Shown here: positions 42,815-60,705 of the stretch, piece by piece
Position numbering within the stretch: the stretch's first letter is position 1
Layout: each line of letters starts with the position of its first letter
Assembly: GCF_001194135.2 (NCBI RefSeq)
Contig: NC_068990.1
Coordinates: 72,613,465-72,677,464, forward strand
Reading direction: 5' to 3'
Length of the DNA stretch: 64,000 nucleotides
Source: Octopus bimaculoides
Lineage: Eukaryota
Position numbers and translations under genes: made by a program
Notes under the pieces: model-generated
What the model saw: only the letters and a program-made list of their open reading frames with translations
What the model was told of the DNA's origin: nothing
The model's database searches: none

Positions 42815-43100
42815 TGACGTGAACTCTAAGACTCATGAGGATAGAGTTTAACCCCAGTCCCTATGGTGTATAAGTAACTGAGTGAGATTACAATGCTCTC
42901 CACTTGACGGGAAGTCAGTCTGTCACAGGGTTAACTTCCCAGGTATTGCCGGAACTCATGTGCAGCTGAGAGGACTGGAGCAATGTGAAAAGAAGTGTTT
43001 TGCTCAAGTATTAAATGCACCACCTGGTCCAGGAACTGAAACCACAACCTTAGGATTATAACTGCACACCCTAACCACTAAGCCATATGACTTCACTAGA
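42815..43100 (-). mobile_element. SINE family D (tRNA-like head, different tail)
   Basis: RC head atggcttagtggttagggtg, ttgagcaaaacacttcttttcacattgctccagt; related copy at 56455-56690. Confidence 0.75.
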
Positions 43101-43478
43101 GCTTAATGTAAACTTATCCAGTTTGGAAGATATTTTCAAATAAAGTACATGTATGGTAGTAGTAGTAGAGGTGTTGATATAAGGTACATGCAAAGTGGTG
43201 GTGTCAGATATGAATGAGTAGAATCTAAAATCAAAAATATTTTAGTCATGAATGTCCTATCCTTTTCTTTGGTGCTGAGCACTCAGGACCATATTCCCAA
43301 ATAGATCCTCCTTTTCTAAGATGGTTGGGGTGTGATGAGGGAGATTTGACTCTTTTGTCTAGCAGGTCAAGAGACCATGAAGAGGCTCTGTTGTTGGCTT
43401 GAAAAATGTATACACAAATATTACATATTCAAAATATGCACATGAGTGTCTTAAGTAATTCTTTCCCTAGTTTTCATA

Positions 43479-43522
<44 letters not shown>

Positions 43523-44390
43523 NNNNNNNNNNNNNNNNNNNNNNNNNNNNNNNNNNNNNNNNNNNNNNNNNNNNNNNNNNNNNNNNNNNNNNNNNNNNNN
43601 NNNNNNNNNNNNNNNNNNNNNNNNNNNNNNNNNNNNNNNNNNNNNNNNNNNNNNNNNNNNNNNNNNNNNNNNNNNNNNNNNNNNNNNNNNNNNNNNNNNN
43701 NNNNNNNNNNNNNNNNNNNNNNNNNNNNNNNNNNNNNNNNNNNNNNNNNNNNNNNNNNNNNNNNNNNNNNNNNNNNNNNNNNNNNNNNNNNNNNNNNNNN
43801 NNNNNNNNNNNNNNNNNNNNNNNNNNNNNNNNNNNNNNNNNNNNNNNNNNNNNNNNNNNNNNNNNNNNNNNNNNNNNNNNNNNNNNNNNNNNNNNNNNNN
43901 NNNNNNNNNNNNNNNNNNNNNNNNNNNNNNNNNNNNNNNNNNNNNNNNNNNNNNNNNNNNNNNNNNNNNNNNNNNNNNNNNNNNNNNNNNNNNNNNNNNN
44001 NNNNNNNNNNNNNNNNNNNNNNNNNTATATATATATATATATATATATGAGAGGGACAGACAGATATACAGATGGTCAAATGAATGGATAGACAGACAGA
44101 TAGATGGATAGAGCAGTGAATGGATAGACAAACAGACAGGTGCATGGATGGATAGATAGGTGACAGATGGATAGATCATCATCATCATTTAACGTCCATT
44201 GCATTGTCCATGCTGGTATGGGTGTGTTTACATGGCACCAGTATGGGTCCTTTTTATGCAGTAGCAGCACCTGCGAACCTGCAGGTTTAAGAATGCTCAG
44301 CTGGAGAGGGATGTAGGGAATGGCCTGTATGCAAGGACAACCACAAAAAGATAGATAGTTGCTAGATAGACTGCTACACAGATAGATACA

Positions 44391-44427
<37 letters not shown>

Positions 44428-44615
44428 TATATACAGAAAGATATATATATATGTGTGTGTGTATAGGGAGAGAGTAGAGAGAGACAGAGATAGACTGACA
44501 GACAGATAGATAGATCGACAGACTGATGGATGGACAGACAGATGAGTGTATAGAGATATGGATACAAAGAGAGAGAGAGAGAGAGAAATGGATAGATAGA
44601 TGGATAGATAGATAG

Positions 44616-44698
<83 letters not shown>

Positions 44699-45879
44699 GA
44701 TAGATAGATAGATAATAGATGAATAGACAGATAACCGGATAAATAGATGGACATGTAGATGGGTAAATAGATGAATAGGCAGATACATTGATAGGAAGAT
44801 AAATAAGCAGATAAAATGTTAGATACATACAGACATGCTGACAGACAGAGACATAAAGAATGCAGTAGAATAACAATGAAATACCATCTAAAAATAGATA
44901 TGGTAGAAGGGGATGAATAATCAACAGGAGGTTATCACTGATTCAGAGAGAAATACAAAAAGAAAAGGCTGTTGATGATAGGAAAATAAAAAAATAAAAT
45001 AAAAAATACATTACCTGACATCATATGAAATACGATTTAAAATATATTTGAGACAATATGAAAGCTTACAGCTCAAACTCATGAAAGTCTAAAGAAACTC
45101 ATTTTTATGAAACCTCCTTAAAAGACGATTCATTAAAAGTTAATTCTTTTTTTTTTCAAAAATGTTAAATTAAAACAGCTGATAGTCAGTGAGAATTAAA
45201 AGAAATAATAAAGACTGACAAGTAAGTTTATGACTATAAACAAACAACACTGACTATTGTTAGTAGATGATAGGATGTTTCGCAATGGGTTTGAATTATA
45301 TAATTATGAACTTATTTGGTAAACAATAAGTTGTCTCCCTTTAAATTAACACTGTAAAGGGTAAAAAATCAATTCTGGGAAAATACTTATTGCATACAAT
45401 AATATAAATAGCCTACGTAGAGTGTTACTAATATCTAGTTTGAAAATATTTATCGAATTAAGATTGTGTCTGTGTAACATTGATCAAAGTATTAAGTATT
45501 AGTTACTAATAAGATTTTAGTCTACACATTTAGGATGGATGAATTTCCAAGGATTGACAAGTCCGGGTTGGTATACAAACCATGCAGACTCAACTCACTG
45601 GGAAGAGAAGAGGAGCAAAGAATTAGTTTTGGTTAGATTAGTACAAATTGGATTAGTTCAAGGCTAGGCTTCTATCCCCACCTCTCTCTTTATTATAGAT
45701 TAAATGGTAATATATGGAGAGGAGAAAAAGTATGCACGATAATTTAATGTGCTGCCTTGTGGGGACATGAATGCAGTGAGGTATACCGCAGAAATAGCAG
45801 CCAACAAAATAATTACAAAAGTGGTTAAGTGTGTGTGTGTGTGTGGGTGCTCATACATGTGCGTGTGTGTTGGTTGAGA

Positions 45880-47400
45880 ATAATATTGATAGGTCAATGC
45901 GTGAAAGAGTTTGTAGCACAATTGATTACGAGCAAAATAAACCACCCCCTAGATGAGATGCAGTTCAGTTTTATGCCAGAAGGATTTACGTGCAGAAGTA
46001 CTTATCGAGGGGTAAAGCCCAATATGTCACATTTAACAGTCTGGAGAAGAGTTTGACAGGGTTCCGTAATCTGCAGCCTGGTGGTCACTAAGGAAACTAG
46101 GGATAGACAAATGGCTTCTGACAACTATACAAGCCATGTATAGAAGTGCAGTCTTCAAGGTGAGAGCTAGGAAGGAGTTCAACAAACACACTAGGTAGCT
46201 AGGGGTTTGCCGGAGTTCAGTCCTTAGCATGTTCCAGTTCATTATAATTCTCCAGGCTACAACATAGGAGTTTAAGATCAGTTGTCCAATGGGAGCTCAT
46301 ATGCTGGCGATTTAGTTCTTGTAGCCAGATCTGAAGAAAATTCAAAGAAATTCCATACAGAGAAGCAAAATCTAGAATCAAGAGTAAACTGAACAGACAG
46401 AAGAAAGAAAAGGCTGTTATCAAACAGGGAAATGGTTGTGTTTTGTCTGCAGAAATTCTATATGGTGTACCCAGTATAAAGCATGGGCTCAGATGAGATG
46501 TAATGATATCACAGGCAGACTAACAGAAAAAAATTTGATACCATAAATGGCAGATGCACAGGTGTAGTTAGCAATATGAATACACATAAAATCAAATGTT
46601 AGGGAGGCTCACTAGTAGTGGTTGATGACTTTTGTTATCTAGGTGATCTAACTTAAGAGAAGTGGCAGGCAGTACTGTCTTAAGACATGAGAACCTGGAC
46701 GCCCTCACAGGTCTGGGGACCCAATCTTGATCTATATATGTTGTGGTTTACTGTTGATAAATGAACACTATAAGACCCAGTGCACTGATTTGCCCAGGCG
46801 CCTATAATGCTGCTACGATGGCTCTTGAGGTGGGTGTATCAATGGCATAGGAGCTAGAGTAAGAACAGGGTGGAAAAAGTTTAAGGAATCATTACCTCTG
46901 CTGATAACAAAAGATTTCTCTCAGAGTTAAGGGGTAACTGGATGATGAAATGCAATGCTGTATAGTAGCATAAATTTAAGACATGATATGTTGGAAATTG
47001 AGACAGCAAGGAAGAAACAGGAAGAAATGAAGTAAGATCTGCTAGATATGTGATGTTGGCTTTTATGAACAACTATGTAGAAAGGAATAGAGAAGAAAAA
47101 AAATGGCAATGAGGAAGGAATTAGAATGTGCAAAAGTGAGAGAGAGAGAGAGAGAGAGAGAAGACTGTGCTGGTATGGATGTGTGATACATTTGGAGTAT
47201 ACCAGCTGCGTAAAGATGTTCTGAGCGCTCAAAGAACATGGAATCTGTAGAAGACTCAGAAAGTCATAGGCCAAAATGGTGATGGCTAATCTCAGGAAGC
47301 CAAATCTCATGAAAGAGCGACAAAGTACAATGACGAGTGGTAATGTGATACTGGAGAAGGCCCACTCTTAAATGCAACCGCAGGGAAAACAATCGTTATA
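45880..47400 (+). mobile_element. Fragmented RTE LINE interrupted by a small insertion near 46670-46830
   Basis: FVAQLI....LDEMQFSFMP, later VVDDFCYLGDL-like and WYG/EHGICRR-like 3' motifs. Confidence 0.7.
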
Positions 47401-49169
47401 ATGATGGATGGTGGTGGTGGTGAGGTTAGGATAATATTTCTACATTTGAGTCCTTGTTCATTATATTAATTATATTCCTATTAATTCTCCTTCAATTGCA
47501 ATCTTCATTACTCTCTGAACTGTCAATCTCGCCACAGTTATTCACTGCGCATCATCTGAGTAATGAGTAACAGCACTGGATTTATCAAAAGTCAATCCTT
47601 TCAGCCATTGCCCTTTGTCATCCTACATTTCTACTGTTGTGATGACTGTATAACAAAGGATGGCTAGCCTTCGTTGCCTTTCCCACCATATCATCATTCA
47701 TCACTCTCTCTCTTAGCATCACCCATCTTTATTGCTATTCTTCAATCCTTCACTCTTTCTCTCACATCATTTCCTCTTCTATTTTTCTTCACTGACACAT
47801 ATCACTCTACTCAGCGTTAACTCCCATCACTCACCTCCCCTTCTATTTCTCCTCCTGTCATCTCCATCATGTAGCTGCTCATCACTGTCTCCCTTCCATT
47901 GCTCCCTCCTCTAACACCCAATTAACTATGCTTCTCCTATCACATTCATATCCTTTCTTCTATTCATCTCTTCGGTCATGTCTGCATTGAATGAAGACAA
48001 GAGGACCTCTCTAATGCTTGTGCCATGATAAGCAGCATTGATTATGCCGCACAGAATGGTTAGCAAGTTAACCCCTTAGAATTTAAATCTGCCATATCTA
48101 GCCCAGATATCTTACCTGTTTTATGGTCAAACCAGCCAAATTTGGTTAGCAGACTTTTGTTTCTGGTTTGGCATGGATTTTATGGCTAGATGCCCTTCCT
48201 AACACCAACCACCCCACAGAGTGGACTGAGTGCTTTTTACATGGCACCAACACAGGTGAGAGTCAATGTGAATCAATAAGCATTTTGTCAGACAAAATAA
48301 TCTAAAAGTTAGTGGGTTAAAGGAGACAACATAAGATAGAGAGGACTCATCTGTCTTACCAGAAACTTGGCAATCTTTAGAGCAATGATGTCACAATAAA
48401 ATGTTCCTTGCACACACTGTAAAATGATTGGTGTTACAAAGGGCACAGTGCTGTAGAAGTCATGCTAGATACAATGTATGAGTGAGATGTGGCTCCCCAA
48501 CTTGTCACTAATTCCAAATAGGAGGTAACAAGGTAACTCGTGACAAGCCATCCAACCTATGCCAGCATGGAAAACTAACATACAATAATGATGATGGTTG
48601 TTATTGCTTAGGTTCATGCTACTCCTGATAAAGGTATTCTGACATTCCGGACATGACCACTCCACCTTTTTTTCTTTCTTTCTCAAGCACATTGCACTCA
48701 AGACCACATTAGGCCAATGTGACCAGTGCTGAGACAGTAACATATGATTCAAGGAAAAATCTGGCTGCTATGTCTAGCATGTCAAGCGACCATATAGAGG
48801 CTTTCTCACTGAGCTTTGAAGTTGCATATAGCTAAGAGAATATACACTCATATAGACTATTTAATGATAGAGTGAAGAGGTTTGATTCAGTCAGTTTATT
48901 ATGAATGGAAACACTAATTCTAACAGTGTTCATTGATTCTCAGATGCTTTTTTTTTTAATTGATTTATTTTCTTCTTCTGCCATATAGATTTTCAACATG
49001 GTCATTTCTATTCTTAATTTAATTTTACTGCCATTCTGTTTCAATTAGTTGATACTTAGAGTGTCGGAAATTAAATAGAAAAGTAAAAACTAAAATTCTG
49101 AAAATACTAAGTTCTTTTAATCTGATTAGTGTTACCACACAGACACCAGATAAAGTCCATCAATAAATC

Positions 49170-49860
49170 ACTTATATCTTTTATTTGTTTCAATCAATAG
49201 ACTGTGGCCATGCTGGGGCACTGCCTTGAAGAATTTTTGTAAAATGAATCAACCCAGTACTTATTCTATCAGTCTCTTTTGCTGAACCACTAAGTGATGG
49301 AGAGATAAACAATCACAAAGACACAAACACACACATAAATGATGGGTTTCTTTCAGATTCTGTCGACCAAATCCACTCACAAAGCTTTGGTCAACTGAGA
49401 CTTTAGTAGAAGACACTTGCTCAAGGTGCCACACAGTAGGACTGAACTCAGAACCATGTGGTTGGGAGGCAAACTTCGTACTACATGGCCATCTATATTA
49501 CTTACTTTTAACTTGTTTCAGTCTTTGGACTGTGGCCATGCGGAGGCATTGCCTTGAATGGTTTTAGTCAAACAAATCAACCCTAGAACTTATTTTAAAG
49601 CCTGGTACTTAATCTTTTGGTCTTACAGGAATGTAAACAAACCAACAACAGGTGTCAAGTGGTAGCTGGGGAGAAGCACAAACACAAGGACATGCACACA
49701 TTTATATATATACAATGAGCTTCTTTTAGTTTCTATCTACCAAATCTACTCACAAGGCTTTAATCATCCTGGGGCTATGGTGGAAGACACTTGTCCAAAG
49801 TGCTGTGCAGTGGGACTGAACCAAAGACCACATTGTTGGGAAACCAGCTTCTCACACAGC
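49170..49860 (-). mobile_element. Two head-to-tail SINE family A copies
   Basis: gactgtggccatgc..gcactgccttgaa repeated at about 49200 and 49530, each followed by caaatc.actcacaa.gct. Confidence 0.85.
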
Positions 49861-50464
49861 CGGTAAGTATGATGTTCTTTTATCCTAATTGGAAATATCA
49901 TGACATTCTACCAGATTACTTGGCCATTTACACATTTGTATTGAAGTCTAACCTTAACAACTCAGATCAGGTCATTTCACAGCATAGACTTATAGACACT
50001 GTGGTAAACTGCATGCTAGAGTAGCAACCAACCCACCACAAAAAAACAAAAAACAAAAACAAAAAAACAACTTTTTTTTGAAATTCTAACACTTGTTTGA
50101 TATCTTTCTAACTAAACATAAATCTAAAGTGTATGCGTATGTAGACTTTACCACTGTAGTAAAAAACAGTTTGAGAAAAAAAATAAGATAATGAAACAAT
50201 ATACTATTTCAGTAAGCAATGATACAGAAGGTAGTTTATGCTTAACAATTCAAGAAGATGGATACTTACTAATAGCATGAGCAAACTAATAGCTGGAAAG
50301 GATGGTAAATCTGGTTAATTTCGTTTGATCATGGATGAAACGCTACAGACAATGAGAGATGTTATATCTGCAGTGGTAGAGATATTATAGCAGAATTATT
50401 AAGGTATCCTTGTGAGCAGAATTAATTATATCAAAATGGGTTAGAGCAAGACACAACTTTATGT

Positions 50465-50640
50465 ACATTACCTTTATCTGGCACACTCTGTAAAGTGGTT
50501 GGCATTAGGAAGGACATCCAACCACAGAAACCAAGCCAAAACAGACCATGGAACCTGGTGCGGCTCCTGATCTTGCCAGTTCCTGTCAAGCCATCCAACC
50601 CATGCCAGCATGGAAAATGGATGTTAAATGTTGATGGTGA
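50465..50640 (-). mobile_element. RTE-type 3' tail
   Basis: Written in its own sense on + as ggttggcattaggaaggacatcca..ccatgccagcatggaaaatgga; strand call uncertain (reads like the + copy at 33860). Confidence 0.55.
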
Positions 50641-51283
50641 TGTACTAGTAACCCAGGTAGTGTAACAGACTGGTGTTCTAAATGCCATTCTCCTTTGCCC
50701 AATGAAAGCTGAGCTAAACACCAGACATTCATTTCGCTTTTTGTTGTTGCCATATTACAGTGTGGGAGATGAATACCATAGTATAGTGAGGAGTACAATT
50801 ATAGATTTTGGTAACTAAATATGGAAGTCAATGGCTGTGAGGTCAAGACGTAAGATTATTGATCACTTAGTGGTCATGAAATTAAATCTTACTAAAGATA
50901 GTCATAGTGTTTGGCTGCCAGACAGGCACATAGTTCTGTCTATCACAATCTACATGACTGAAAACAAGCAATGTTTCTATGTCATAGACAAACGCATTGG
51001 ACTGAAGTTTAGATTTGTAGTCATTGAGGCATAAGAAATAAATAAAGTGTTTCTTTCAGTAATGTATCATCGTAACTTGTTCACATAAGAATAAACTAGA
51101 AAGATGGTTCTTTTAAGAACAATGTGTAAAATACCACAGGAATAGCTTTGGGGTAGGACATTTGCTTCCCAACCACATAGCTTCAGGTTCATTCCCACTG
51201 CTTGTCATCTCGAACAAATATCTTCTATACCTCTGGGATGACCAAAGCCTTGTGAGTGGATTTGGTAAATAGAAACTAAGAGA

Positions 51284-51513
51284 GGCGGCGAGCTGGCAGA
51301 AACGTTAGCATGCCGGGCGAAATGCTGAGTGGTATTTCGTCTGCCGCTACGTTATGAGTTCAAATTCCGCCAAGGTCGAATTTTCCTTTCATCCTTTGGG
51401 GTCAATAAATTAAGTACCAGTTACGCACTGGGGTTGATGTAATCGACTTAATCCCTTTGTCTGTCCTTGTTTGTCCCCTCTATGTTTAGCCCCTTGTGGG
51501 CAATAAAGAAATA
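51284..51513 (+). mobile_element. SINE family B, young, with 13-bp target-site duplication
   Basis: agaaactaagaga at 51271-51283 and 51514-51526; many CpGs retained. Confidence 0.92.
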
Positions 51514-51556
51514 AGAAACTAAGAGAAGCCTGTTATACAGATATATATATATATGA

Positions 51557-51875
51557 AGGTGGTTAGAGCATTGGGCTCACAATCATGAGGTAGTGAGTTC
51601 GATTCCCGGACTGGGCTGTGTGTTATGTTCTTGAGCAAGACACTTTATTTCTCAATTCTCCAGTTCACTCAGCTGTAGAAATGAGTTGTAACATCACTGG
51701 TGCCAAGCTGTATTGGCCTTTGCCTTGAATAATATCAATGGCATGAAGAGGGGAGGTTGGTATGCATGGGCGACTGCAGGTCTTCTATAGACAACATTGA
51801 CTGGACTAGTGCCTTGGAGGGGAACTTTCTAGGAGCAGCGCCATGGTCATTCATGACTAAAAGGGGTCTTTACCC
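51557..51875 (+). mobile_element. SINE family C
   Basis: ggttagagcattgggctcacaatcatgaggtagtgagttcgattcccgg; collinear with 18695-18985. Confidence 0.85.
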
Positions 51876-51886
51876 TTTTATATATA

Positions 51887-51936
<50 letters not shown>

Positions 51937-52611
51937 CGTGTGTTTATGTTAATGTAACTTAGTGTTTTGGCAAAATAGACCAGTAGAATTGGTACCAAAC
52001 TTAAAAAAAAAAAAAAAGAAGTACAGAGGTAGATCTGTTCAACTAAACCCTTCAAAGTGGTGCCCCAGCAAGGCTGCAGTCCAATGACTGAAACAAGTAA
52101 AAGAAATAAAATACATATTAGGAGTCAAAAAAAGTGTTCATTTCAACCACTGTTTTGAAAGTCACAAGACCAAATAATTCAAGTCCAGAAAGGTAAAAAA
52201 ACCCAGAAATATGGCCACAACATACAAACCTAACTGAAGGAAGCGAGAGTATGGGTCTGAATATATCAAACATACGTGCTTGTTCACAGCTTGTTCATAA
52301 ATATCTGCAGTCAGCCTTGCCAATATAGTGAAATAGTATGATTCAGTCTAATCCACTAAAATAGGATGAGAAATATAGATGCTAAATCTGGAAAAATGAT
52401 TCATATAAGTGATTACGCCTCTCTATGAAAATAACTCGGAATCAATAAAAAAAAAATGTTTATCAATAATTTAAGGCCAATTTAAGAGTTTACATAAGCT
52501 CACTCACCAAACTCATTATTTTTCTGTATGTATTACACTCATCATTGCAATAGAGAGGTTTCGAATGAAATCAGGAAAGTCATCGACTATGAATTCCGTA
52601 GTATGCTAACA

Positions 52612-52692
52612 GGTAGGAGAAGGAGGAAAAGGAGAAGGAGTAGAATGAGGAGGAGGAGGAGGAGAAGAAGAAGGAGGAGAGGGAGAAGAAGA
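52612..52692 (+). repeat. Purine trinucleotide microsatellite (AGG/AGA)n
   Basis: Direct reading. Confidence 0.9.
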
Positions 52693-53199
52693 TTTAGAGC
52701 CCTCTATTAAGTATAGAGAAAAGCTATATATTTAAAAACTGATACAAAAGGCCATTAATCAACAAATATTAATGACAATGTGTTTATGATGATGGAAGTG
52801 TGTTCATGTAATAATTCAACAGATACTGTGGACAGGAAGTGTTGTGGTAGCCAAGATTATACATACCTAATAAGTATTTGGGCAATTCTTTTTCTAAGAA
52901 AAGGTGAACATTCAGGAGATAGCTTAAGTTTAAAACTAAAATATAAATATTCTGATCGAATCTTCCTTGTGTCAACACACACCTCCTTGCAACAATGTAA
53001 CTTTTAATTTAATCAAGATATCCTTGGCCTGAAGAGTAGTCGCCAGTATACACCACATTTGGATTTTACCACTTCTGAGGTTCCACTCAATTTGAAATGT
53101 ATGTAGCCCAGATCTTTCCTACTCCATTCTGTAACTCTTATACACACACACACACATTATATTATAATATATATATATACCAAATTATATAATATATAC

Positions 53200-53950
53200 A
53201 CCTATATATAGGCAAGAGTGGGGAAAACAAGGGTGGGGTGTGGGTTAGGTGGGGTATGTAGGAGGATAGGGAAGGTGGAGTTGGAATGTGTAGGGGTGGG
53301 GTTACGAGGCAGGGGAAGGAGAAGGTGGGTAGGAGTGAAGAGAAGAGAGGAGAGTAGGAGTTGGAGCAAGAGAGAAGAGGTGGGTGAGAGGAAGTAGGTG
53401 TGAGGGGGAGAGAGGCGAGGGGAGGAGAGTTGAGCCCATGTGGTGCAAAGGAGCGAAGAGAAAAGATTAATCCCTGTTCATGGTGCAAACGGGTGTCCGG
53501 ATGGCCCCTGTGCAAGGACAATCCGAACACGGACAGGTGTTGCAAAAAGTGACTGGTAGAGCGGAAATGGCGTGAGACCGGGGTGTCATTGCCGAGTCAG
53601 ATGTCTCAGAGGTGTTCTGTGAACCGGTCAGTCAAGCAGTGTCCCGTCAGCCCAATGTATAGAGAAGGGCAGAGAGCGCAGGAGATGCAGTAGATGACAT
53701 TGGTAGACATGCAGGTGAAGGAAGGAGTCGGTGATGTGATAGGGTCGATGATGGGTGCCGGTGAGGAGGGTGGTATTGGAGAGGTAAGCGCAAGTGCGGC
53801 AGCATGGGCGGGAGCAGGGGAATGAGCTGGGTTGGAAGGTTGGGTTAAGGAAGAAGCTGTGGACCAAGAGGTCTCGCAGGTTGTGGGCTCATTTCGCTGG
53901 AAGGCTCAGAGAATGGTGTGTTGGAGAGGTAGAGTGGTAGGTGAGGGGAA
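53200..53950 (-). mobile_element. Penelope-like element remnant: GIY-YIG endonuclease plus pyrimidine-rich 3' region
   Basis: NLRDLLVHS..FPCSRPCCRTC..(frameshift)..TCMSTNVIYCISCALCPSLYIGLTG..L.DRFTEHL*DI*..PVSRHF..EQGLIFSLRSFAPHGLN. Confidence 0.9.
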
Positions 53951-54120
53951 ACACAGACATACTAATATATACATATTTATATATGACAGGCTTCTTTCAG
54001 TTTCCATCTACCAAATTCACTCACAAGGCTTTGGTAGGCCTGAGGCTATAGTACAAGACACTTGCCCAAGATTTCAAGCAGTGGGACTGAACCTGGAAGC
54101 AAGCCACTCCTGCACCTATG
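53950..54120 (-). mobile_element. SINE family A fragment
   Basis: gacaggcttctttcagtttccatctaccaaattcactcacaaggctttgg. Confidence 0.8.
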
Positions 54121-54201
54121 AGTACACAGATACATTTTTTCTATTAAATGTATTTAATATTCTGTGTAAATTGACTTGTTTAACTTACTTCTCATTACAT
54201 T

Positions 54202-54236
<35 letters not shown>

Positions 54237-55739
54237 NNNNNNNNNNNNNNNNNNNNNNNNNNNNNNNNNNNNNNNNNNNNNNNNNNNNNNNNNNNNNNNN
54301 NNNNNNNNNNNNNNNNNNNNNNNNNNNNNNNNNNNNNNNNNNNNNNNNNNNNNNNNNNNNNNNATATATATACTGTGTTTATTTGTGTATAGGGTGCACT
54401 ATTTCATACCTGATTATAACTTTAAAAAAATGGGGAGTGACTAATACATGACTAAATAAAATATATAAACACCATTAAGTTCAACAAATTACTTTGCTTT
54501 ACCTATGACATTATGGGAAGTGTATATATATATATATATATATACATACATACATATTTGTTTGTGTGTGTGTGTAAGTGTGGTGGAAGGGCATGTGTAC
54601 AAAGCCTTAGCAAGCTCTATAGGACAGGTGAGACTGATGTGGTTAATTGCTTCTCTTGAACTGCATGTTGGCAACCACAGGAAAATCACGGATGTGAAGG
54701 AAATTCTAGAGGGCTAACATTTCGGCAAGGAAGAAATAGGTATAATTACATTAATGCATAAGCCTGATGGAATAGACAATGTGGAAGAGACAAGAGTCGA
54801 GTAGGCCTAAGTGGAGGTAGCACACATACACACACACTTATTCATGTGTGTAACTGTGTGATTATAAGCTAAGTAGAAAATGCATTAAAGCCTGGATTTC
54901 TTACCTAGAGCATAAAACATTAAACTGCAGTGCAAAAAAAGGCTGCAAACACTGCAAAAGAGCAATACAGAATATAGCTGAAATATTGCTTATGTGCAAC
55001 ATCCTGTTCGTTCAATTCAATTTCTCAAGAGAAGGAAGCACACTAGAAACTAAACCCCAACAATGGCTGTATAATTAAACTATCAGACTCCTTTTTATTT
55101 TTGGTTTATATATTTTTGAGACAACTTGTAACATAAAACAGTTCAAGTTTATCAGATGTTTAATCTCATCATTGGCGTTTCTGTTTACACTATATTTCCT
55201 CAAGGAATATATATGTGTTTATATGTGTGAAAAAAATATGCATGCATGCATGCATGCTTACACAAACAGGGCAACTAAAGGTAATCAGAATATACTGATA
55301 GAAACAGTTAAAAGAGCAGTTACTAATTTGATAAATCACTGCTCAATTGTGCTGCATTATTCACACTTTATTTCTCATCAATCTTTATCCTTTCTTGTTT
55401 TCAGAGTTACAACATTAAACAGAATTACACTGAAAAAAAGCATTGTCTTCATCCAACTTATTATACCTAAAACTACTTGCAACACCTTCACAACTGATTA
55501 AGCATATTATATCTAATCCTACTGTTGGAGAGAGGCTGAAATGGCCAAATGGTTAATAAAATAAAATAAAAAAAATAGTGGGAGGCGTATAACTGTTGAT
55601 CTCCCATCCCTTGTTTAATCCATAAGTATTTAGTAATACTTGTGAAGTAGTTTCTTCTACCAAAAATCGAAATTAAGAAGCCATGGCCTATTTTATAAAT
55701 AAAGTATCCTTGTTTAATGACAGTAGCTGTGTAACTAGT

Positions 55740-56070
55740 TGTTCACATTTTTCAAGGATGAGGGAACAAACATGCAGTACAACTTTACAAGCAATAAATT
55801 TCAGTATTAGTAATGAACTGAAAATTAAGTGAACTGCAATACAAGCAAGCCAAGGGAGAAACACTTGTGACAGAGGAAGACCAAGGAAGTCATGCCACCC
55901 AAAACAGGTGTAAAAAATGACCTCAGAAGGCTGAAATCTCACGAAGGAGATGAACAAGGGGGCACAGCAAAAAGTGAAAACAATAAGCTGGAAAAACCTC
56001 AAACAACCCATGCAAACATGGAAAATGGAAGTAATGCCACCACTACCACTGATGATGATGATGAAACTTA
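55740..56070 (+). mobile_element. Decayed RTE 3' end
   Basis: gacagaggaagaccaaggaag, aaatgacctcaga, acccatgcaaacatggaaaatgga, (GAT)n. Confidence 0.7.
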
Positions 56071-56192
56071 TGTTAATTAATGTTCCAAACTACAGCTTAA
56101 TAATGAAAAAGTTGGTTACTTCACCAAGTCCCTCCAAATCCTTATTTATTTTCCAAAGTAATTAAAACATATAGGCAGAATGTGGTTAAATA

Positions 56193-56264
56193 GAAATATA
56201 GTGGCAAAAGTTTCCAAAGGGCCAACTACTGTTGGCCTTTTGGAAACTTTTGCTACCATATTTC
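56193..56264. repeat. 34-bp-arm fold-back hairpin with 4-nt loop
   Basis: Arms 56193-56226 and 56231-56264; 31/34 Watson-Crick pairs. Confidence 0.92.
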
Positions 56265-56349
56265 AGCTGCTGAATCTGTTGGAAATAGCAGGTAAATCTT
56301 CTTCAGATCATATCCTACCATTTAAAAAAAAAATACGCATATAATACAC

Positions 56350-56790
56350 ATGACAGGCTTCCACGTAGTCTCCATCTACCAAATTTATTCACAAGGAACT
56401 GGTCAACCGAGAGCTATGGTAGAAGGTACTCGCCCAAGGTAAAAGTTAAAGTTACCTTCTTGAGGTACGCCAACTCATAAGAGCTGGTTTCCCGGTTTCA
56501 TGACATATAAACTCCTCACCTGGATGGGTCACCAGTCTGTTGCAGGTTTACTCATTTTTGCCAGGTGAGTGGACAGGAGCAATGTGAAATGAAGTGTTTT
56601 GCTCAAGAACACAACGTGTTGCCTAGTTCAGGAATCAAAACCACATTCTTAAGAAGAGTCCACCCTAACCACTAAGCCATGCACCTCCACACTTGCCCAA
56701 GGTGTTGCATAATGGAACTAAAATCGAAACTATAAGATTGCAAGGGAAGCTTCTTAACCACACAGCCATGTTTGCACTGCACCTATATAT
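56350..56790 (-). mobile_element. SINE family A copy split by a SINE family D copy (about 56455-56690)
   Basis: A body at 56350-56440 resumes as cacttgcccaaggtg..cttcttaaccacacagccatg at about 56690-56770. Confidence 0.7.
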
Positions 56791-56828
56791 ATATATATAT
56801 ATATATATATNNNNNNNNNNNNNNNNNN

Positions 56829-56875
<47 letters not shown>

Positions 56876-58169
56876 CATGAAATACAAGTATGTCCATTTT
56901 CAGGCAAGACTGAACAGCTTCATGAAAATGGAACTGTATATTAAATTACAATAATCTAGTTATTTGTAGTAACTATTCAATAGAGAGCAAGAATTCAGTA
57001 TGACAGGACACTTGATATCCATGAAAGATCACAAAAGACCACTCCAGGTGAAAAACAAACTCCTTAAGTTAAAGAACTTTTAAAACATGATTCATCCAAA
57101 AGACAGATGCCATGGAGAAACTTTGAAAGAAAACCGAAACCAGGTTAATCATTTCAACATGGACCTACTCACAATGGTTTCTATTAAAATGTTTAAATTT
57201 AGATTCAAATCTTGGACGGAAGTTTCATTATTCTATGAAAGATATTTAGATCTTAAGATGTAAATATTCATCTTTCATTAAAGTAGAAAGTTATTTTCAC
57301 TAACTTCATTAAACCTCTCATAATTTGTGATTATTTTTTGAAAATTAAAACACAAAGGCAGTATATTCTTGTTAAGAAATATGGTTACAAAAAGGTTAAA
57401 TATATATGAATATCACTTCAGATACATCTTTGCAAAAATGACAATTTTATAAATATTGACATTCAATTAAATAGTAATTATACACTGCAGGTGGGGGGTG
57501 GTTATATAATAATACAATACATTCTAATTTAAATAATGTAATTAATTCTCAAACAGCTATAGTGTAATTATTTCTCTAGTACATTTTGGTAAATAACATA
57601 ATTGATATCTTCAAATTTTCAATTTCATTTTCCTCAGTTTGTTATGTAGCATTTAACTAATCAATGCTATTTCAGTAATGAACTCTAGATATCACAAACA
57701 GATGATAGTTTTCTTAGTACAGACAAAAACAAAAACAAAAAAAAAAGTTTTAGAAATTGATTTTTCTTTTATAAAATCTATGTTATAAACATTACAGGAA
57801 TGTGTTCTGAAATTGATATTTCTATATTGATAATTCCAATAAACCAAAACTTTCCATTCAATTACAAAAGCAATATTAGTTAAAATTAGCGTTATTACTC
57901 TAAATATTATTCTAAATACATTCCAAATAGAAAGCTGGGAAATTCTTTAAAAGGCTAGAATGTCTACATCATACAATTTTGGTTACAAGTTAATAATTAC
58001 TGTGTTAAAAATCTGCAAGTTAAAGAAAGTATTTTACTAATTGTCAATAGTTAAAGGTACCGTCCCACTCTACTCTATTTGCATGTAAAAATAAAAAGTA
58101 AATAATTTTGTGGTTATAGCCTGATATAAATTAATAGCCTGATATAAATTAATGCTTCATTATCTTTAT

Positions 58170-58460
58170 CTTTTGCTTGTTTCAGTCATTGGAGTGCAGC
58201 CATGTTAGGGTTTTAGTCAAACAGAATCGACCTTGGGCTTATTTCTTAAAGTATAATGCTTATTTTATCAGTCTCTTTGACTAAACTGCTACATTACGAG
58301 GATGTAAACAAACCAACACCAGTTGTCATACAATGTCTTTGGGTGACAGACACAAACACACACAAACATTATAAAAATATACATACACTCACAATGAGCT
58401 TCATTCAGTTTCCTTTTACCAAATCCACTCCCAAGGCATTGTTCAGCCTAGGAGAGTTGT
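58170..58460 (-). mobile_element. SINE family A
   Basis: tgtttcagtcattggagtgcagccatg..aaacaaaccaacaccagttgtca..caaatccactcccaaggc. Confidence 0.8.
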
Positions 58461-59118
58461 AGATAAAAAAGAAAAAGAAAATTGATCCTTTTAATGCAGA
58501 TCTGAAGAATCTAGAGAGAATGATATGAGTATGGTCCACTGAACAATGCAAAAGAAAGAGTGGGAGATGAAGAGACCAGCAAAAATCAGAGGGTCCAACA
58601 GCTACTAGTAAAAGATGAAAAAGAGAGAGAAGCATTTAAAAAATGAAATGATAGTAGAGAGGAGACATGTAGATTATGGGGAAAAGAAAAAAAAGGAAAA
58701 TAGTTGTGGGAACTGATTTAGGAGAAATGAAGGGTAAAAACAGATGAAGGATGGTGAGGTTGTTGACATGCAAAACAAAGAAAAGTAAATACCAAAATAT
58801 GTTGATGATGATGATGAGCATTAGATATGATAATAATGATTATTATTATAGGGGGCAGGAGTGTAAATACACAGGAAATTAAAAGAAAACATGCTTCATC
58901 TTATAATTTTGCTAATTTCTGCTGAAGATGGTCTATTCCAAGTAAAAGCAACCCAATTGTTTCAGAACTAGATTTTCTTTCTATGGTAATATCAACATGT
59001 AATTTAATACATTTTCCAAGAGTAGTGTAAAGACAGAAGATGCAGATAGCACCTTGTAGACTTTTTTACATTTTACACTTCATATTTTGTCAGATACATT
59101 TCAGGTGACATTTCACAA

Positions 59119-59193
59119 CCTTACCTTGTTTCCAATTAATTCTTACCTTCCTTGTGCTTGAAATACAGCCTAAAAGAGAAACTTAGTTACCTG
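59119..59193 (-). promoter_or_regulatory. Three candidate 5' splice donors downstream of the stop codon
   Basis: CAG|GTAACT (exon end 59191), AAG|GTAAGA (59147), AAG|GTAAGG (59125). Confidence 0.45.
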
Positions 59194-59223
59194 AGAGAAT
59201 AGAGGGCTTCTGTGATCATATAG

Positions 59224-60702
59224 TCAACACAGGTAGCTTTCCTTGAAAGGTTGATAATTTGGTATAGTGTGAGGGTACTTGACATGCCAAACAATGTGGA
59301 ACGTGAACTCAATTCGGTCTTGGCAGTGCTTGTTACAGGACGGACATCGAAACGGATCTTCGTCAATCGGTGAGTGCAGGCTCTGATGGAGGTGGAACAT
59401 TGTGTAGTCATGAAAGTAAATCCCGCAGTGGAAACACTGATGGAAGCCAACATCCGTAGTTGGGGTAGCTGAGGTAGTTGTCACATCACGTTTTTCCTCA
59501 GATTCTGAATCTAAGCTTGGAGTTTTAGACGTTTGGATAAAGCTACCTCTCTTCCATCGATAATGCTCGGATGTAGCCGTTTCGCATACCATGCTTGCAG
59601 TTGAAACAGTTGCAGTAGACTTGTTCATGCTCAAGTCCATAACGCTGTCCTCAGATGTACGGGTCAAAGTTGACAAAGGTGGTGCCATCTGGGCAGACTG
59701 AGGTAGATCTGTTAATGGAGTGTTTGAGGGCGATAGGATTTGTGATGCAGATGAGGTAGAGGGGTATTGCTTTTCTTTATCTTTCTGACTCTCTGCTGAT
59801 GATGTTCTTAGAAGTTCTGAAGAGCTCATATCAGCCACCGAAGTCAATGATGGTGGAGAATGGATAACGCTACGTGATGGCATGGCAATTGTGTACAAGC
59901 TTGGAGGTGTACTCGTATGAACATAAGTCGTTGTTTCTGCAGTATGACAATTGCCGCTACTAGTGGCCATGCTTTTGTGAACCCCATGTTGCTGGTCTTC
60001 CATTTCAGATGGTGTCGTTGGTGGAGTCACTTGTTCCAGTTTAATTGAACTCAGAGAAGAAATAGCCTGAAGGTGCTGTTGCTGTTCATTTTGCATATCT
60101 CTTTGGTGCGGTTGCTGTGATGACCTTTCAAGTTGTTGAGGCGGTGGCTTACCTTGTAGCAGTCCAGCTTGTTGCTGTGACTGATCATGGAGTGTTAAAT
60201 TTGATGGAACTGCTGGTCCTGAGGTTGTTGTCGTTGTGTTGTGCATAAGAGTCTCATAAGTCAATGCTTGTTGCAGCAAAGCTCTCTGTTGCATGGCAAA
60301 AGCCTGGTAGGCAGCCAAGTTGACCTGGGGAGTTGGTCGTGCTGGATTTCGGTATCCATAAAGTTTACCCCGCATGTGTACATTACGCTCGTGACGGCGT
60401 AGATCGTTGCTCTGTGTAAAGCATCTGTGACAAATCTTACATTTGTAAGGTCTCTCACCAGTATGCACCCTCTCGTGCACCTTGAGATTAGATGACCACA
60501 GGAACGACTTTCCACATGTTTGGCAAACGTACGGGCGATCCGCACGATGGAGCTGTTCATGCTTTCGCAGTGTTGCCACCTCGCGGAACGAGCGCTGGCA
60601 CAGTTCACAACGATATGGCCGAGCACTGCTGGAGGATACCGCGGCGGGAGGTGGGTATTTAATCCCGCTATTTGCTTCGTTACCACCACTGGAATCCTCC
60701 AT
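59224..60702 (-). CDS. C2H2 zinc-finger transcription factor, 492 aa: three N-terminal fingers plus a C-terminal Ikaros/Hunchback-type dimerisation finger pair
   Basis: Uninterrupted ORF. The first 34 aa of the track ORF are the intron polypyrimidine tract (…ttttttgttttgcag|AGG ATG G), so the likely start is the ATG at 60702 (A at -3, G at +4). TGA stop at 59226-59224. Fingers: YRCELC..HEQLH, YVCQTC..HERVH-TGERP, YKCKIC..HERNVH; C-terminal CFHC..F.D..M...H...H and DPFRCPSC...QDRIEF..HIVWH. Q-rich and S/T/P-rich spacer. An additional upstream coding exon cannot be excluded (the exon begins in frame with AGG). Confidence 0.95.
   Translation of the reverse strand: MEDSSGGNEANSGIKYPPPAAVSSSSARPYRCELCQRSFREVATLRKHEQLHRADRPYVCQTCGKSFLWSSNLKVHERVHTGERPYKCKICHRCFTQSNDLRRHERNVHMRGKLYGYRNPARPTPQVNLAAYQAFAMQQRALLQQALTYETLMHNTTTTTSGPAVPSNLTLHDQSQQQAGLLQGKPPPQQLERSSQQPHQRDMQNEQQQHLQAISSLSSIKLEQVTPPTTPSEMEDQQHGVHKSMATSSGNCHTAETTTYVHTSTPPSLYTIAMPSRSVIHSPPSLTSVADMSSSELLRTSSAESQKDKEKQYPSTSSASQILSPSNTPLTDLPQSAQMAPPLSTLTRTSEDSVMDLSMNKSTATVSTASMVCETATSEHYRWKRGSFIQTSKTPSLDSESEEKRDVTTTSATPTTDVGFHQCFHCGIYFHDYTMFHLHQSLHSPIDEDPFRCPSCNKHCQDRIEFTFHIVWHVKYPHTIPNYQPFKESYLC
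59284..59445 (-). other. Ikaros/Hunchback-type C-terminal dimerisation zinc-finger pair (DZF)
   Basis: FHQCFHCGIYFHDYTMFHLHQSLH-SPIDEDPF-RCPSCNKHCQDRIEFTFHIVWH matches, by eye, the Ikaros pattern C..C...F.D..M...H...H..DPF.C..C....QDR.EF..HI. Confidence 0.85.
60376..60615 (-). other. Array of three DNA-binding-type C2H2 fingers
   Basis: Three CxxC-x12-HxxxH/HxxxxH units with RADRPY and TGERPY linkers. Confidence 0.95.
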
Positions 60703-60705
60703 CCT

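What the first reader, a model, noticed from the sequence alone, without database searches (positions are those of the whole stretch)
59470..59759. Three let-7 8-mer sites (CTACCTCA) clustered in 290 nt of the coding sequence
Plus strand tgaggtag at 59470-59477 (extends to nt 9), 59699-59706 and 59752-59759, so the mRNA has three seed+A1 8-mers. They fall in two reading phases (T-T-S and S-T-S versus D-L-P-Q), so one repeated peptide does not explain them, and they lie in the low-constraint S/T/P spacer rather than in finger linkers. My rough expectation for one such 8-mer in the CDS is about 0.02-0.1. The 59752 site also offers possible 3' pairing (agg..gtat). Caveat: S/T/P-rich codons enrich this motif.
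Basis: partly seen in the sequence, partly recalled or inferred. Interest (0 to 1): 0.8.

Follow-up and report, generated by a model that had tools for sequence, protein, structure and literature searches.

The report
Ancient let-7 sites inside coding sequence
An octopus zinc-finger transcription-factor gene has three perfect let-7 microRNA target sites in its coding sequence and a fourth in its spliced 3' UTR; its orthologues in cuttlefish/squid-type cephalopods, abalone, scallop and chiton also carry 2-4 coding-sequence sites, so this looks like a phylum-wide let-7 target rather than chance.

Summary
TGAGGTAG is at 59470, 59699 and 59752 on the + strand, so CTACCTCA occurs three times in a minus-strand coding exon (60705-59191). 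Protein-preserving codon shuffles expect 0.085 sites, and none of 20,000 reach three.

The interpretation as let-7 target sites is supported and can be extended:
- All three sites survive in Argonauta. Two survive as 8-mers and one as a 7mer-m8 in three decapodiform lineages.
- A fourth site at 12560-12572 has 13 nt of contiguous complementarity to let-7. It opens a 3' UTR exon joined across a 46.6-kb intron, a junction seen in decapod RNA-seq contigs.
- The orthologous coding sequences of abalone, scallop and chiton carry 3, 4 and 2 let-7 8-mers, in three reading phases.
- Of all 65,536 8-mers, CTACCTCA is the only one with at least two copies in all four coding sequences.
- The scallop 3' UTR adds 16 more copies in a 62-nt tandem repeat.

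Two details in the finding fail. The "spacer" is not low-constraint, and the extra 3' pairing at 59752 is no better than shuffled flanks.

The protein has a hunchback/Ikaros-like finger layout, which recalls let-7 regulation of hbl-1 in C. elegans. No repression has been shown experimentally. I class it as a new member of a known kind.

The parts
59191..60705 (-). Main coding exon of a C2H2 zinc-finger transcription-factor gene. Acceptor AG at 60707-60706, ATG at 60702-60700, stop TGA at 59226-59224, then 33 nt of 3' UTR up to a GT donor at 59190-59189.
   Evidence: ORF and translation. Splice-site context. 100% identical to Octopus proteins and 95% to Argonauta.
60376..60615 (-). Three N-terminal C2H2 fingers, the presumed DNA-binding cluster.
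   Evidence: Pfam zf-C2H2 and zf-H2C2_2 hits at residues 31-110 of the exon translation. Nearly invariant across four mollusc classes.
59752..59759 (-). let-7 8-mer site 1 (CTACCTCA; codons TCT ACC TCA = S-T-S; CDS nt 944-951).
   Evidence: Invariant at all three 4-fold positions in Octopus, Argonauta and three decapodiform lineages.
59699..59706 (-). let-7 8-mer site 2 (CTA CCT CA(G) = L-P-Q; CDS nt 997-1004).
   Evidence: It shares an alignment column with an L-P-Q 8-mer in the scallop. Similar LP(Q/P)AH sites occur in abalone and chiton.
59470..59478 (-). let-7 8-mer site 3, pairing through nt 9 (ACT ACC TCA = T-T-S inside the KRDVTTTS motif; CDS nt 1226-1233).
   Evidence: It is an 8-mer in Argonauta and in abalone (identical GTGACAACTACCTCA) and a 7mer-m8 in decapodiforms.
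59284..59445 (-). Pair of C-terminal C2H2 fingers, resembling the hunchback/Ikaros-type dimerisation fingers.
   Evidence: Sequence.
12576..59190 (-). 3' UTR intron of 46.6 kb. The donor is 33 nt after the stop codon.
   Evidence: The donor CTCTCAG|GTAA is conserved in Argonauta and decapodiforms. The acceptor is ttccag|GTGACC. The spliced junction is seen in decapodiform RNA-seq contigs L003-L012. The homologous intron is about 4.5 kb in decapod contig L013.
12358..12575 (-). Conserved part of the next 3' UTR exon. Its 3' end is not determined; poly(A) signals lie 319-441 nt into the exon.
   Evidence: BLAST blocks of 91% and 85% identity between octopus and decapod contig L013. Poly(A) signals.
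12560..12572 (-). Fourth let-7 site. It is an 8-mer (12560-12567) extended to 13 contiguous complementary bases (ACCTACTACCTCA = let-7 nt 1-13), 42 nt after the stop codon in the spliced mRNA.
   Evidence: Duplex energy is -24.4 kcal/mol versus -17.5 +/- 2.4 for shuffled flanks (1.1% as good). Decapodiforms keep the 8-mer; the extension has one C-to-T change that would give a G:U pair. The region is not a let-7 hairpin or gene.

Best explanation
The three CDS motifs and a fourth motif at the start of the next 3' UTR exon are target sites for the let-7 microRNA. Selection has kept them in the mRNA of a hunchback/Ikaros-like zinc-finger transcription factor since before the mollusc classes diverged.

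Proposed mechanism, inferred from established miRNA biology: when let-7 is present, let-7-loaded Argonaute binds the four 8-mers, which lie within about 580 nt around the stop codon, and lowers translation and mRNA stability. The factor would then be made only where or when let-7 is low. Three of the sites are in the coding sequence, so no alternative 3' UTR isoform can escape all of them.

Shown here: the sites, their excess over codon-preserving nulls, their synonymous conservation, and their recurrence in four mollusc classes.

Inferred, not shown: Argonaute binding, repression, and the developmental role.
For: 1. Excess over protein-preserving nulls in every lineage tested. Counts are observed versus shuffle mean:
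- Octopus 3 versus 0.085.
- Haliotis 3 versus 0.12.
- Pecten 4 versus 0.15.
- Chiton 2 versus 0.13.
- With dinucleotides also preserved, empirical P values are 4e-4, 0.010, 5e-5 and 0.0145.

2. Unbiased scan of all 8-mers. CTACCTCA is the only one with at least 3 copies in each of the octopus, abalone and scallop CDSs. It is the only one with at least 2 copies in all four CDSs. It has the highest summed count, 12, and the next two 8-mers are its 1-nt shifts.

3. Reading frames. The motif is encoded in all three phases and through different peptides: STS and TTS, LPQ, and SYLT or PYLM. A peptide-level cause is therefore excluded.

4. Conservation within cephalopods.
- All three sites are kept in Argonauta; 2 stay as 8-mers and 1 as a 7mer-m8 in three decapodiform lineages.
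- 7 of 8 4-fold sites inside the motifs are invariant against a 43.7% background, while 4-fold sites flanking site 3 vary freely.

5. Positional sharing across classes.
- The LPQ site is shared by cephalopods and scallop.
- The TTS site is shared by cephalopods and abalone.
- The C-terminal site is shared by scallop, abalone and chiton.

6. The 3' UTR site pairs with let-7 well beyond the seed, 13 contiguous nt. This points to let-7 itself rather than to another reader of the 8-mer. Decapodiform transcripts carry this exon and keep the 8-mer.

7. Specificity. There are no consistent miR-125/lin-4 or miR-100 seed sites.

8. Octopus let-7 has this seed. Zolotarov et al. 2022 use CTACCTCA as the Ovu-Let-7 response element and find only 77 such 8-mers in the 3' UTRs of 74 genes, so four in one mRNA is exceptional.

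9. No selective sampling. Every orthologue whose DNA could be fetched showed sites. The two oyster look-ups failed for technical reasons.
Against: - There is no experimental evidence here: no AGO-CLIP, reporter, or let-7 perturbation.
- From general knowledge, CDS sites are usually weaker than 3' UTR sites.
- Conservation within cephalopods is only modestly significant on its own. Synonymous divergence in this gene is low (4-fold identity 0.62-0.76), 13-18% of matched control 8-mers are fully invariant, and sites 1 and 2 lie in a broader peak of synonymous conservation.
- Use of the 12575 acceptor in octopus is inferred from conserved splice sites and decapod transcripts, not from octopus RNA-seq.
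- One decapod contig (L002) uses a different 3' UTR exon without the site.
- The chiton 3' UTR (2.5 kb) has no site.
- Individual sites turn over between classes. The scallop lacks the TTS site and cephalopods lack the C-terminal site.
- Co-expression of let-7 and this mRNA was not examined.
Confidence: 0.8

Rival explanations
1. Chance clustering helped by S/T/P-rich codon content and by look-elsewhere effects. A genome-wide scan will find some gene with three copies of some famous 8-mer.
For: Some 8-mer with at least 3 copies is expected in this CDS; shuffles give a mean of 1.2 such 8-mers. At about 1e-4 per gene, a few genes per genome could show three let-7 8-mers by chance.
Against: The same 8-mer is independently over-represented in the abalone, scallop and chiton orthologues. 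It is the single top 8-mer out of 65,536 in an unbiased cross-species scan. The product of the per-lineage empirical probabilities is about 3e-12 under the strictest null.
Confidence: 0.02
2. The motif is a by-product of another constraint on the same nucleotides. Candidates are conserved peptides with biased codon choice, an exonic splicing or RNA-structure element, or the synonymous constraint tied to cephalopod RNA editing.
For: The amino acids at the sites are invariant in cephalopods. Sites 1 and 2 lie in a roughly 165-nt stretch of raised synonymous conservation.
Against: - The motif recurs in three reading phases and in non-homologous peptide contexts across classes.
- Protein-, codon- and dinucleotide-preserving shuffles do not reproduce it.
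- It also occurs in non-coding 3' UTR sequence in cephalopods and 16 more times in the scallop.
- Extensive RNA editing is not abundant in molluscs outside the coleoids, according to the introduction of Zolotarov et al. 2022.
Confidence: 0.05
3. CTACCTCA is read by some trans-acting factor other than let-7, such as an RNA-binding protein or a DNA-level exonic regulatory element.
For: Eight of the ten coding-sequence copies in octopus, abalone and scallop share a T before and a G after the motif, and let-7 pairing does not require either base.
Against: - The conserved core matches exactly let-7 nt 1-8 with the A opposite nt 1.
- The 3' UTR copy extends to 13 contiguous let-7-complementary bases in octopus, and in decapods has one C-to-T change that would give a G:U pair.
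- The upstream T of the S-T-S copies is fixed by the serine codon.
- All copies lie on the mRNA-sense strand of exons.
Confidence: 0.1
4. The + strand sequence TGAGGTAGTAGGT at 12560-12572 is the 5' arm of a let-7-family microRNA gene rather than a target site.
For: It is identical to the first 13 nt of mature let-7 on the + strand.
Against: - No Rfam family reaches its gathering score anywhere in the window.
- The region does not fold into a pre-miRNA-like hairpin (z = -1.2).
- The identity stops at nt 13.
- The complementary strand is demonstrably exonic in decapodiform transcripts of the zinc-finger gene.
Confidence: 0.01

Closest known systems
C. elegans hbl-1 (hunchback-like), a let-7-family target in the heterochronic pathway; and ztf-16, a second hunchback/Ikaros-like (HIL) factor downstream of let-7
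   Same: A transcription factor with an N-terminal or central finger cluster plus a C-terminal finger pair, carrying multiple let-7-complementary sites. The HIL family definition and the let-7 links of hbl-1 and ztf-16 are described in bioRxiv 10.1101/2022.06.20.496913.
   Different: By my own recollection the hbl-1 sites are all in the 3' UTR; here three of four are in the coding sequence. ztf-16 regulation by let-7 was found to be indirect. Orthology of the mollusc gene to hbl-1 or Ikaros is not established. Its closest relatives in the searches are all molluscan wherever the source names the organism; several close hits are unnamed.
let-7 sites in the human Dicer coding sequence (Forman, Legesse-Miller and Coller, PNAS 2008; cited from memory, title seen in reference lists)
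   Same: Several let-7 seed matches inside an ORF, recognised through conservation at synonymous positions.
   Different: A different gene and clade, and a negative feedback on miRNA biogenesis. The sites here span four mollusc classes, turn over among three reading frames, and are coupled to a 3' UTR site with 13-nt pairing.
lin-41/TRIM71 as a deeply conserved let-7 target (own knowledge)
   Same: An ancient, multi-site let-7 target encoding a developmental regulator.
   Different: lin-41 sites are in the 3' UTR, typically with 3' compensatory pairing. The gene family is also different.
Repeat-borne CDS miRNA sites in C2H2 zinc-finger genes, such as miR-181 sites in finger-coding repeats (Huang 2010; Schnall-Levin 2011; own knowledge)
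   Same: Multiple miRNA sites inside the ORF of a C2H2 zinc-finger gene.
   Different: In those genes the sites are copies of one repeated finger or linker sequence. Here they lie outside the fingers, in unique sequence and in different reading phases, so they are not a by-product of domain repeats.

Membership tests
Canonical animal miRNA 8-mer target site for let-7 | Watson-Crick complement to let-7 nt 2-8, plus A opposite nt 1, on the sense strand of a mature mRNA. | tested here: met
   CTACCTCA occurs on the coding strand at 59752, 59699 and 59470 and at 12560 in a 3' UTR exon seen spliced in decapod transcripts. CTACCTCA is the Ovu-Let-7 response element used by Zolotarov et al. 2022.
Canonical animal miRNA 8-mer target site for let-7 | Preferential conservation beyond background. 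| tested here: met
   7 of 8 4-fold positions are invariant against a 43.7% background. The excess recurs in four mollusc classes, and CTACCTCA is the unique top 8-mer.
Canonical animal miRNA 8-mer target site for let-7 | Co-expression with the miRNA, Argonaute occupancy and measurable repression. | not testable with these tools
   Only literature context is available. Let-7 is broadly expressed in non-neuronal tissues of O. vulgaris (Table S5 of PMC9699675).
Hunchback/Ikaros-like (HIL) zinc-finger transcription factors | N-terminal or central cluster of C2H2 fingers (definition quoted). | tested here: met
   Three tandem C2H2 fingers at residues 31-110 (Pfam).
Hunchback/Ikaros-like (HIL) zinc-finger transcription factors | A separate pair of C-terminal C2H2 fingers at the end of the protein. 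| tested here: met
   Two fingers at residues 421-474 of 493. They are 37% identical over 59 aa to the Ikaros C-terminal pair, including the DPFxC...QDRxEFxxHI pattern, and 27% identical to the Hunchback pair.
Hunchback/Ikaros-like (HIL) zinc-finger transcription factors | Orthology to Ikaros-family or hunchback genes, and dimerisation through the C-terminal fingers. | tested here: inconclusive
   Some bivalve orthologues are named Ikaros-like or Pegasus by automated annotation, while others get unrelated ZNF names. An HMMER scan of 1.84 billion representatives finds close relatives that are molluscan wherever a name is given, plus molluscan paralogues. PDB holds no C-terminal Ikaros finger pair. 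Dimerisation cannot be tested here.
let-7 microRNA gene (Rfam let-7 family) | Precursor hairpin with the mature let-7 in the 5' arm. | tested here: not met
   No Rfam hit in the window. No significant hairpin at 12530-12660 on the + strand. Identity to let-7 ends at nt 13.
Repeat-borne CDS miRNA sites of C2H2 ZNF genes | Sites arise from repeated finger- or linker-coding units in one reading phase. | tested here: not met
   The sites lie between the finger clusters, in two phases in octopus and three across species, with no 9-mer repeated three times.

The most novel reading that the evidence does not exclude
The let-7 to hunchback/Ikaros-like transcription-factor link known from C. elegans (hbl-1, ztf-16) may be ancestral to protostomes or bilaterians. 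On this reading, molluscs have kept it for more than 500 million years, largely through coding-sequence sites. The factor would be a mollusc temporal-identity or juvenile-state regulator, shut off as let-7 rises at the larva-to-adult transition or in non-neuronal tissues. Coding-sequence placement, and the 20-copy array in the scallop, would be means of making the repression independent of 3' UTR isoform and unusually strong.
Probability: 0.3. Interest if true: 0.8.

Novelty: new member of a known kind. Interest (0 to 1): 0.66.

Why it matters
Deeply conserved microRNA sites inside coding sequences are rare and poorly documented, and target surveys in cephalopods have looked only at 3' UTRs (PMC9699675).

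In this gene the same let-7 8-mer is kept in 2-4 coding-sequence copies across four mollusc classes. Individual sites turn over between three reading frames, which is direct evidence that selection acts on the RNA motif rather than on the protein.

The gene encodes a hunchback/Ikaros-like factor. That makes a long-standing question directly testable in molluscs: is the let-7 heterochronic circuit of nematodes, and the temporal role of Hunchback and Ikaros in neural progenitors, part of an older shared programme? Synonymous seed mutants and let-7 inhibition would address it.

The finding also gives a concrete positive control for miRNA target prediction in coding sequence outside the model organisms.

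Tried and rejected
- **let-7 gene at 12560.** Rejected: no Rfam hit and no hairpin.
- **Extra 3' pairing at the 59752 site.** It can be drawn but is no better than shuffled flanks. The same holds for the 59699 and 59470 sites.
- **Partner miRNAs of the let-7 cluster (miR-125/lin-4, miR-100).** No consistent seed sites in the orthologous coding sequences or in the octopus 3' UTR exon.
- **Naming the gene family.**
  - Pfam gives only generic C2H2 models.
  - PDB hits are generic fingers or the N-terminal Ikaros/Helios fingers.
  - A word-indexed search with the C-terminal 106 aa returned only 5 short proteins, the two named ones molluscan.
  - Names of HMMER-found relatives and paralogues were uninformative.
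- **Oyster orthologue DNA (P0004, P0006).** Not on record, so the LPH variant of the LPQ site could not be checked.
- **Other genes or tRNAs in the window.** None. The long 'ORFs' are runs of N, and ARAGORN finds nothing.
- **The TGAGGTAG at 51586.** It lies in a tRNA-like repeat inside the 3' UTR intron.
- **The TGAGGTAG at 2356.** It lies about 10 kb past the first poly(A) signals.
- **The TGAGGTAG on the opposite strand at 28227.** It is antisense to the gene.
- None of these three is counted as a site.
- **Prior description in the literature.** Searches found none for this gene as a let-7 target. I could not tell whether its 3' UTR site is in Data S3 of PMC9699675, because the stored file is truncated and I have no LOC identifier.
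Full report
**The observation**

A search for TGAGGTAG finds seven copies in the window against 1.32 expected from dinucleotide-preserving shuffles. Three are at 59470, 59699 and 59752 on the + strand, exactly as reported.

The only real gene in the window is on the minus strand. Its main coding exon runs from 60705 to 59191. The ATG is at 60702-60700, just after a CAG acceptor, and the TGA stop is at 59226-59224. The mRNA therefore contains CTACCTCA, the let-7 seed match plus A opposite nt 1, at CDS nt 944, 997 and 1226.

The 59470 copy pairs on to let-7 nt 9.

**Is it more than chance in this one gene?**

- Permuting synonymous codons while keeping the protein and the codon usage gives 0.085 sites on average, and none of 20,000 permutations reaches three.
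- A stricter permutation that also keeps every dinucleotide count gives a mean of 0.21 and an empirical P of 4e-4.
- Having some 8-mer in three copies is unremarkable for this CDS; shuffles give 1.2 such 8-mers on average.

On this gene alone, a look-elsewhere objection would still stand.

**What the gene is**

The exon encodes 492 residues:

- three tandem C2H2 fingers near the N-terminus (Pfam);
- a Q/S/T/P-rich middle region;
- two further C2H2 fingers at the extreme C-terminus.

The C-terminal pair is 37% identical to that of human Ikaros, including the DPFxC...QDRxEFxxHI pattern, and 27% identical to that of Drosophila Hunchback.

The protein is 100% identical to annotated Octopus proteins (O. 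vulgaris/sinensis and O. bimaculoides), 95% to Argonauta hians and about 90-93% to decapodiform sequences, including one from Acanthosepion pharaonis. Orthologues at about 50% identity occur in bivalves, gastropods and a chiton. Automated annotation names some of these "Ikaros-like", "ikaros family zinc finger protein-like" or "Pegasus", and gives others unrelated ZNF names.

An HMMER scan of 1.84 billion representatives with the C-terminal 106 residues found 18 close relatives. Where the source names the organism they are all molluscan, and several are unnamed. It also found several molluscan paralogue families with similar C-terminal finger pairs. Orthology to Ikaros or hunchback is therefore unresolved.

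The residues at all three sites are invariant in 17 cephalopod sequences. The T-T-S site lies in a KRDVTTTS motif that is nearly invariant in all four mollusc classes examined; the chiton has KRDVTTTT.

**Conservation within cephalopods**

I fetched orthologous DNA from Argonauta (L001) and from three decapodiform lineages (group A L002-L011 and L014-L023; L013; L012).

- Identity at 4-fold sites to the window is 0.76 for Argonauta and 0.62-0.67 for decapodiforms.
- All three 8-mers are intact in Argonauta. Sites 1 and 2 are intact in every decapodiform, and site 3 is a 7mer-m8 there (TCA to TCT).
- Of 199 comparable 4-fold sites, 43.7% are invariant in the five lineages. Inside the three motifs, 7 of 8 are invariant, which gives a binomial P of about 0.015 (my arithmetic).
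- Around site 3 the neighbouring 4-fold sites vary freely while ACT ACC stays fixed.

This evidence is only moderate. Among control 8-mers with the same number of 4-fold sites, 13-18% are fully invariant, and sites 1 and 2 sit in a broader peak of synonymous conservation at CDS nt 920-1085.

The 33 nt after the stop codon end in CTCTCAG|GTAA. This sequence is conserved in Argonauta and all decapodiforms, and similarity stops at the GT.

Decapodiform RNA-seq contigs continue from that point with GTGACTTACTACCTCAGTAATGG.... The window has the same sequence on the minus strand behind a ttccag acceptor, at 12575 downward: GTGACCTACTACCTCAGTAATGGCTGATTCCTGGAGGAGTTGTCAGAAC. The octopus 3' UTR is thus interrupted by a 46.6-kb intron (59190-12576). 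The homologous intron is about 4.5 kb in decapod contig L013.

The TGAGGTAG at 12560 is therefore a fourth let-7 8-mer of the same mRNA, 42 nt after the stop codon. In octopus it is complementary to let-7 nt 1-13 without interruption. Its duplex energy is -24.4 kcal/mol against -17.5 +/- 2.4 for shuffled flanks, and 1.1% of shuffles do as well. Decapodiforms keep the 8-mer; the extension has one C-to-T change that would give a G:U pair (-21.7 kcal/mol).

The region is not a let-7 gene. No Rfam family reaches threshold in the window, and there is no precursor-like hairpin. In octopus, use of this exon is inferred from homology. One decapod contig (L002) joins the same donor to a different exon without the site.

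**Outside the cephalopods: the decisive evidence**

| Species (class) | Locus | CDS 8-mers | Peptide contexts of the 8-mers | Other sites | Shuffle mean |
|---|---|---|---|---|---|
| Haliotis rubra (gastropod) | L024 | 3 | ETM-STS-VPN; HN-LPQ-AHG; DV-TTS-AS (identical GTGACAACTACCTCA to octopus) | two 7mer-m8, one 7mer-A1 | 0.12 |
| Pecten maximus (bivalve) | L025, four exons rebuilt exactly | 4 | AV-STS-TDS; TT-LPQ-PVP; QT-STS-DRA; E-SYLT-stop | 16 more 8-mers in the 3' UTR repeat | 0.15 |
| Chiton (cluster includes Liolophura sinensis) | L026 | 2 | SSC-LPQ-TPS; PYLM at the C-terminus | one 7mer-m8 | 0.13 |

Sources.

In the scallop, a 62-nt tandem repeat of 20.9 copies begins inside the last codons and places 16 further 8-mers within 1.3 kb after the stop.

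With dinucleotides also preserved, the empirical probabilities are 4e-4 (octopus), 0.010 (abalone), 5e-5 (scallop) and 0.0145 (chiton).

An unbiased scan removes the look-elsewhere problem. Among all 8-mers, CTACCTCA is the only one with at least three copies in each of the octopus, abalone and scallop CDSs. It is the only one with at least two copies in all four. It also has the highest summed count, 12, followed by its own 1-nt shifts.

The protein alignment shows both retention and turnover:

- The L-P-Q site is in the same column in cephalopods and scallop. Abalone and chiton share an LP(Q/P)AH site nearby.
- The T-T-S site is shared by cephalopods and abalone.
- The C-terminal site is shared by scallop, abalone and chiton, but is lost in cephalopods (CTACCTG).
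- The S-T-S sites are lineage-specific.

The motif is thus encoded in all three reading phases. Seed sites for miR-125/lin-4 and miR-100 show no such pattern. Every orthologue whose DNA I could obtain had sites. Two oyster look-ups failed.

**Mechanism**

The best-supported reading is that this mRNA is a multi-site let-7 target maintained by selection on the RNA sequence.

What is shown:
- the motifs and their statistical excess;
- their synonymous conservation;
- their recurrence across classes;
- the extended let-7 complementarity of the 3' UTR copy.

What is taken from the literature:
- Octopus let-7 has this seed, and its response element is CTACCTCA.
- Only 77 such 8-mers were found in the 3' UTRs of 74 O. 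vulgaris genes.
- let-7 is broadly expressed in non-neuronal tissues (PMC9699675).

What is inferred:
- let-7-loaded Argonaute binds the four sites clustered around the stop codon and reduces translation and stability.
- The factor is therefore confined to times or tissues with little let-7.
- Placing sites in the ORF makes repression independent of alternative 3' UTR exons, such as the one seen in L002.

By analogy with hbl-1 and ztf-16 in C. elegans, the factor may be a juvenile or early temporal regulator. That is speculation.

**Rivals**

- Chance or composition is contradicted.
- A peptide, codon, structure or editing constraint is contradicted by the three reading phases, the non-homologous contexts, the UTR copies and the presence outside coleoids.
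- A different reader of the 8-mer cannot be excluded computationally. It is disfavoured by the exact match to let-7 nt 1-8 and the 13-nt pairing of the UTR site.
- A let-7 paralogue gene at 12560 is rejected.

**Comparison with what is known, and novelty**

The closest precedents are:
- the let-7 sites of C. elegans hbl-1 (same protein architecture, but 3' UTR sites);
- the let-7 sites in the Dicer ORF (same site location, different gene);
- lin-41 (an ancient multi-site let-7 target).

Repeat-borne ORF sites of KRAB-type ZNF genes are different in kind, because the sites here are not copies of a domain repeat.

I found no description of this gene as a let-7 target in the held literature. The octopus miRNA target survey examined 3' UTRs only.

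I rate it a new member of a known kind. It is well supported computationally and of real interest for miRNA evolution and heterochrony, but it is experimentally untested.

Noticed in passing
window 12576-59190 (minus strand): The 3' UTR contains a 46.6-kb intron whose exon junction lies only 33 nt after the stop codon. The donor is conserved in Argonauta and decapodiforms, and the same intron is only about 4.5 kb in decapod contig L013.
   Followed up: partly
L002 1581-2008 versus L003-L012: One decapodiform RNA-seq contig joins the same donor to a different 3' UTR exon (GAAGTGTTTCTATACC...) that lacks the let-7 site. This suggests alternative 3' UTR exons. The coding-sequence sites would remain in both isoforms.
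   Followed up: no
L025 15812-17110 (Pecten maximus): A 62-nt tandem repeat of 20.9 copies at 94% identity starts inside the last codons (..ESYLT-stop) and carries the let-7 8-mer in 16 further copies after the stop. I did not determine whether it is a selected 'super-target' or a neutral minisatellite, nor whether all of it is in the mature mRNA.
   Followed up: partly
window 51557-51615 (+): A tRNA-like fragment (GGTTAGAGCATTGGGCTCACAATCATGAGGTAGTGAGTTCGATTCCCGG) lies inside the 3' UTR intron and is probably a tRNA-derived SINE. It accounts for one of the window's other TGAGGTAG matches. ARAGORN calls no intact tRNA.
   Followed up: partly
window about 6.5-7.4 kb, 10.8-11.7 kb, 34.0-34.5 kb, 43.5-44.0 kb and 54.2 kb: Runs of N (2,880 in total) flanked by (TA)n, (CA)n and similar microsatellites. 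These are assembly gaps, and they produce spurious long 'ORFs' in the mechanical ORF list.
   Followed up: no
window 59227-60702 (protein); alignment: Short motifs outside the fingers are conserved in most or all of the four mollusc classes: IKLEQVTPP, V(M/I)DLS (not seen in the chiton), KRDVTTTS, and the C-terminal VKYPHTIPNYQPFKESYL. VMDLS resembles a CtBP-binding PxDLS motif (from memory, untested), which would suggest a repressor.
   Followed up: no
window 59620-59785 (CDS nt 920-1085): A local peak of synonymous conservation in cephalopods: 67-73% of 4-fold sites are invariant against 44% overall. It is broader than let-7 sites 1 and 2, which lie inside it. It might reflect 3' supplementary pairing, another RNA element, or low local mutation.
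   Followed up: partly
proteins P0121, P0124, P0135 (Octopus isoforms): Annotated Octopus isoforms differ only in short alternative N-terminal peptides encoded by upstream exons beyond the window. This implies alternative first exons or promoters, with the in-exon ATG at 60702 as another possible start.
   Followed up: no
window 2356-2363 (+): Another mRNA-sense CTACCTCA lies about 10 kb downstream of the first poly(A) signals of the 3' UTR exon. It is probably outside the transcript, but the 3' end was not mapped.
   Followed up: no
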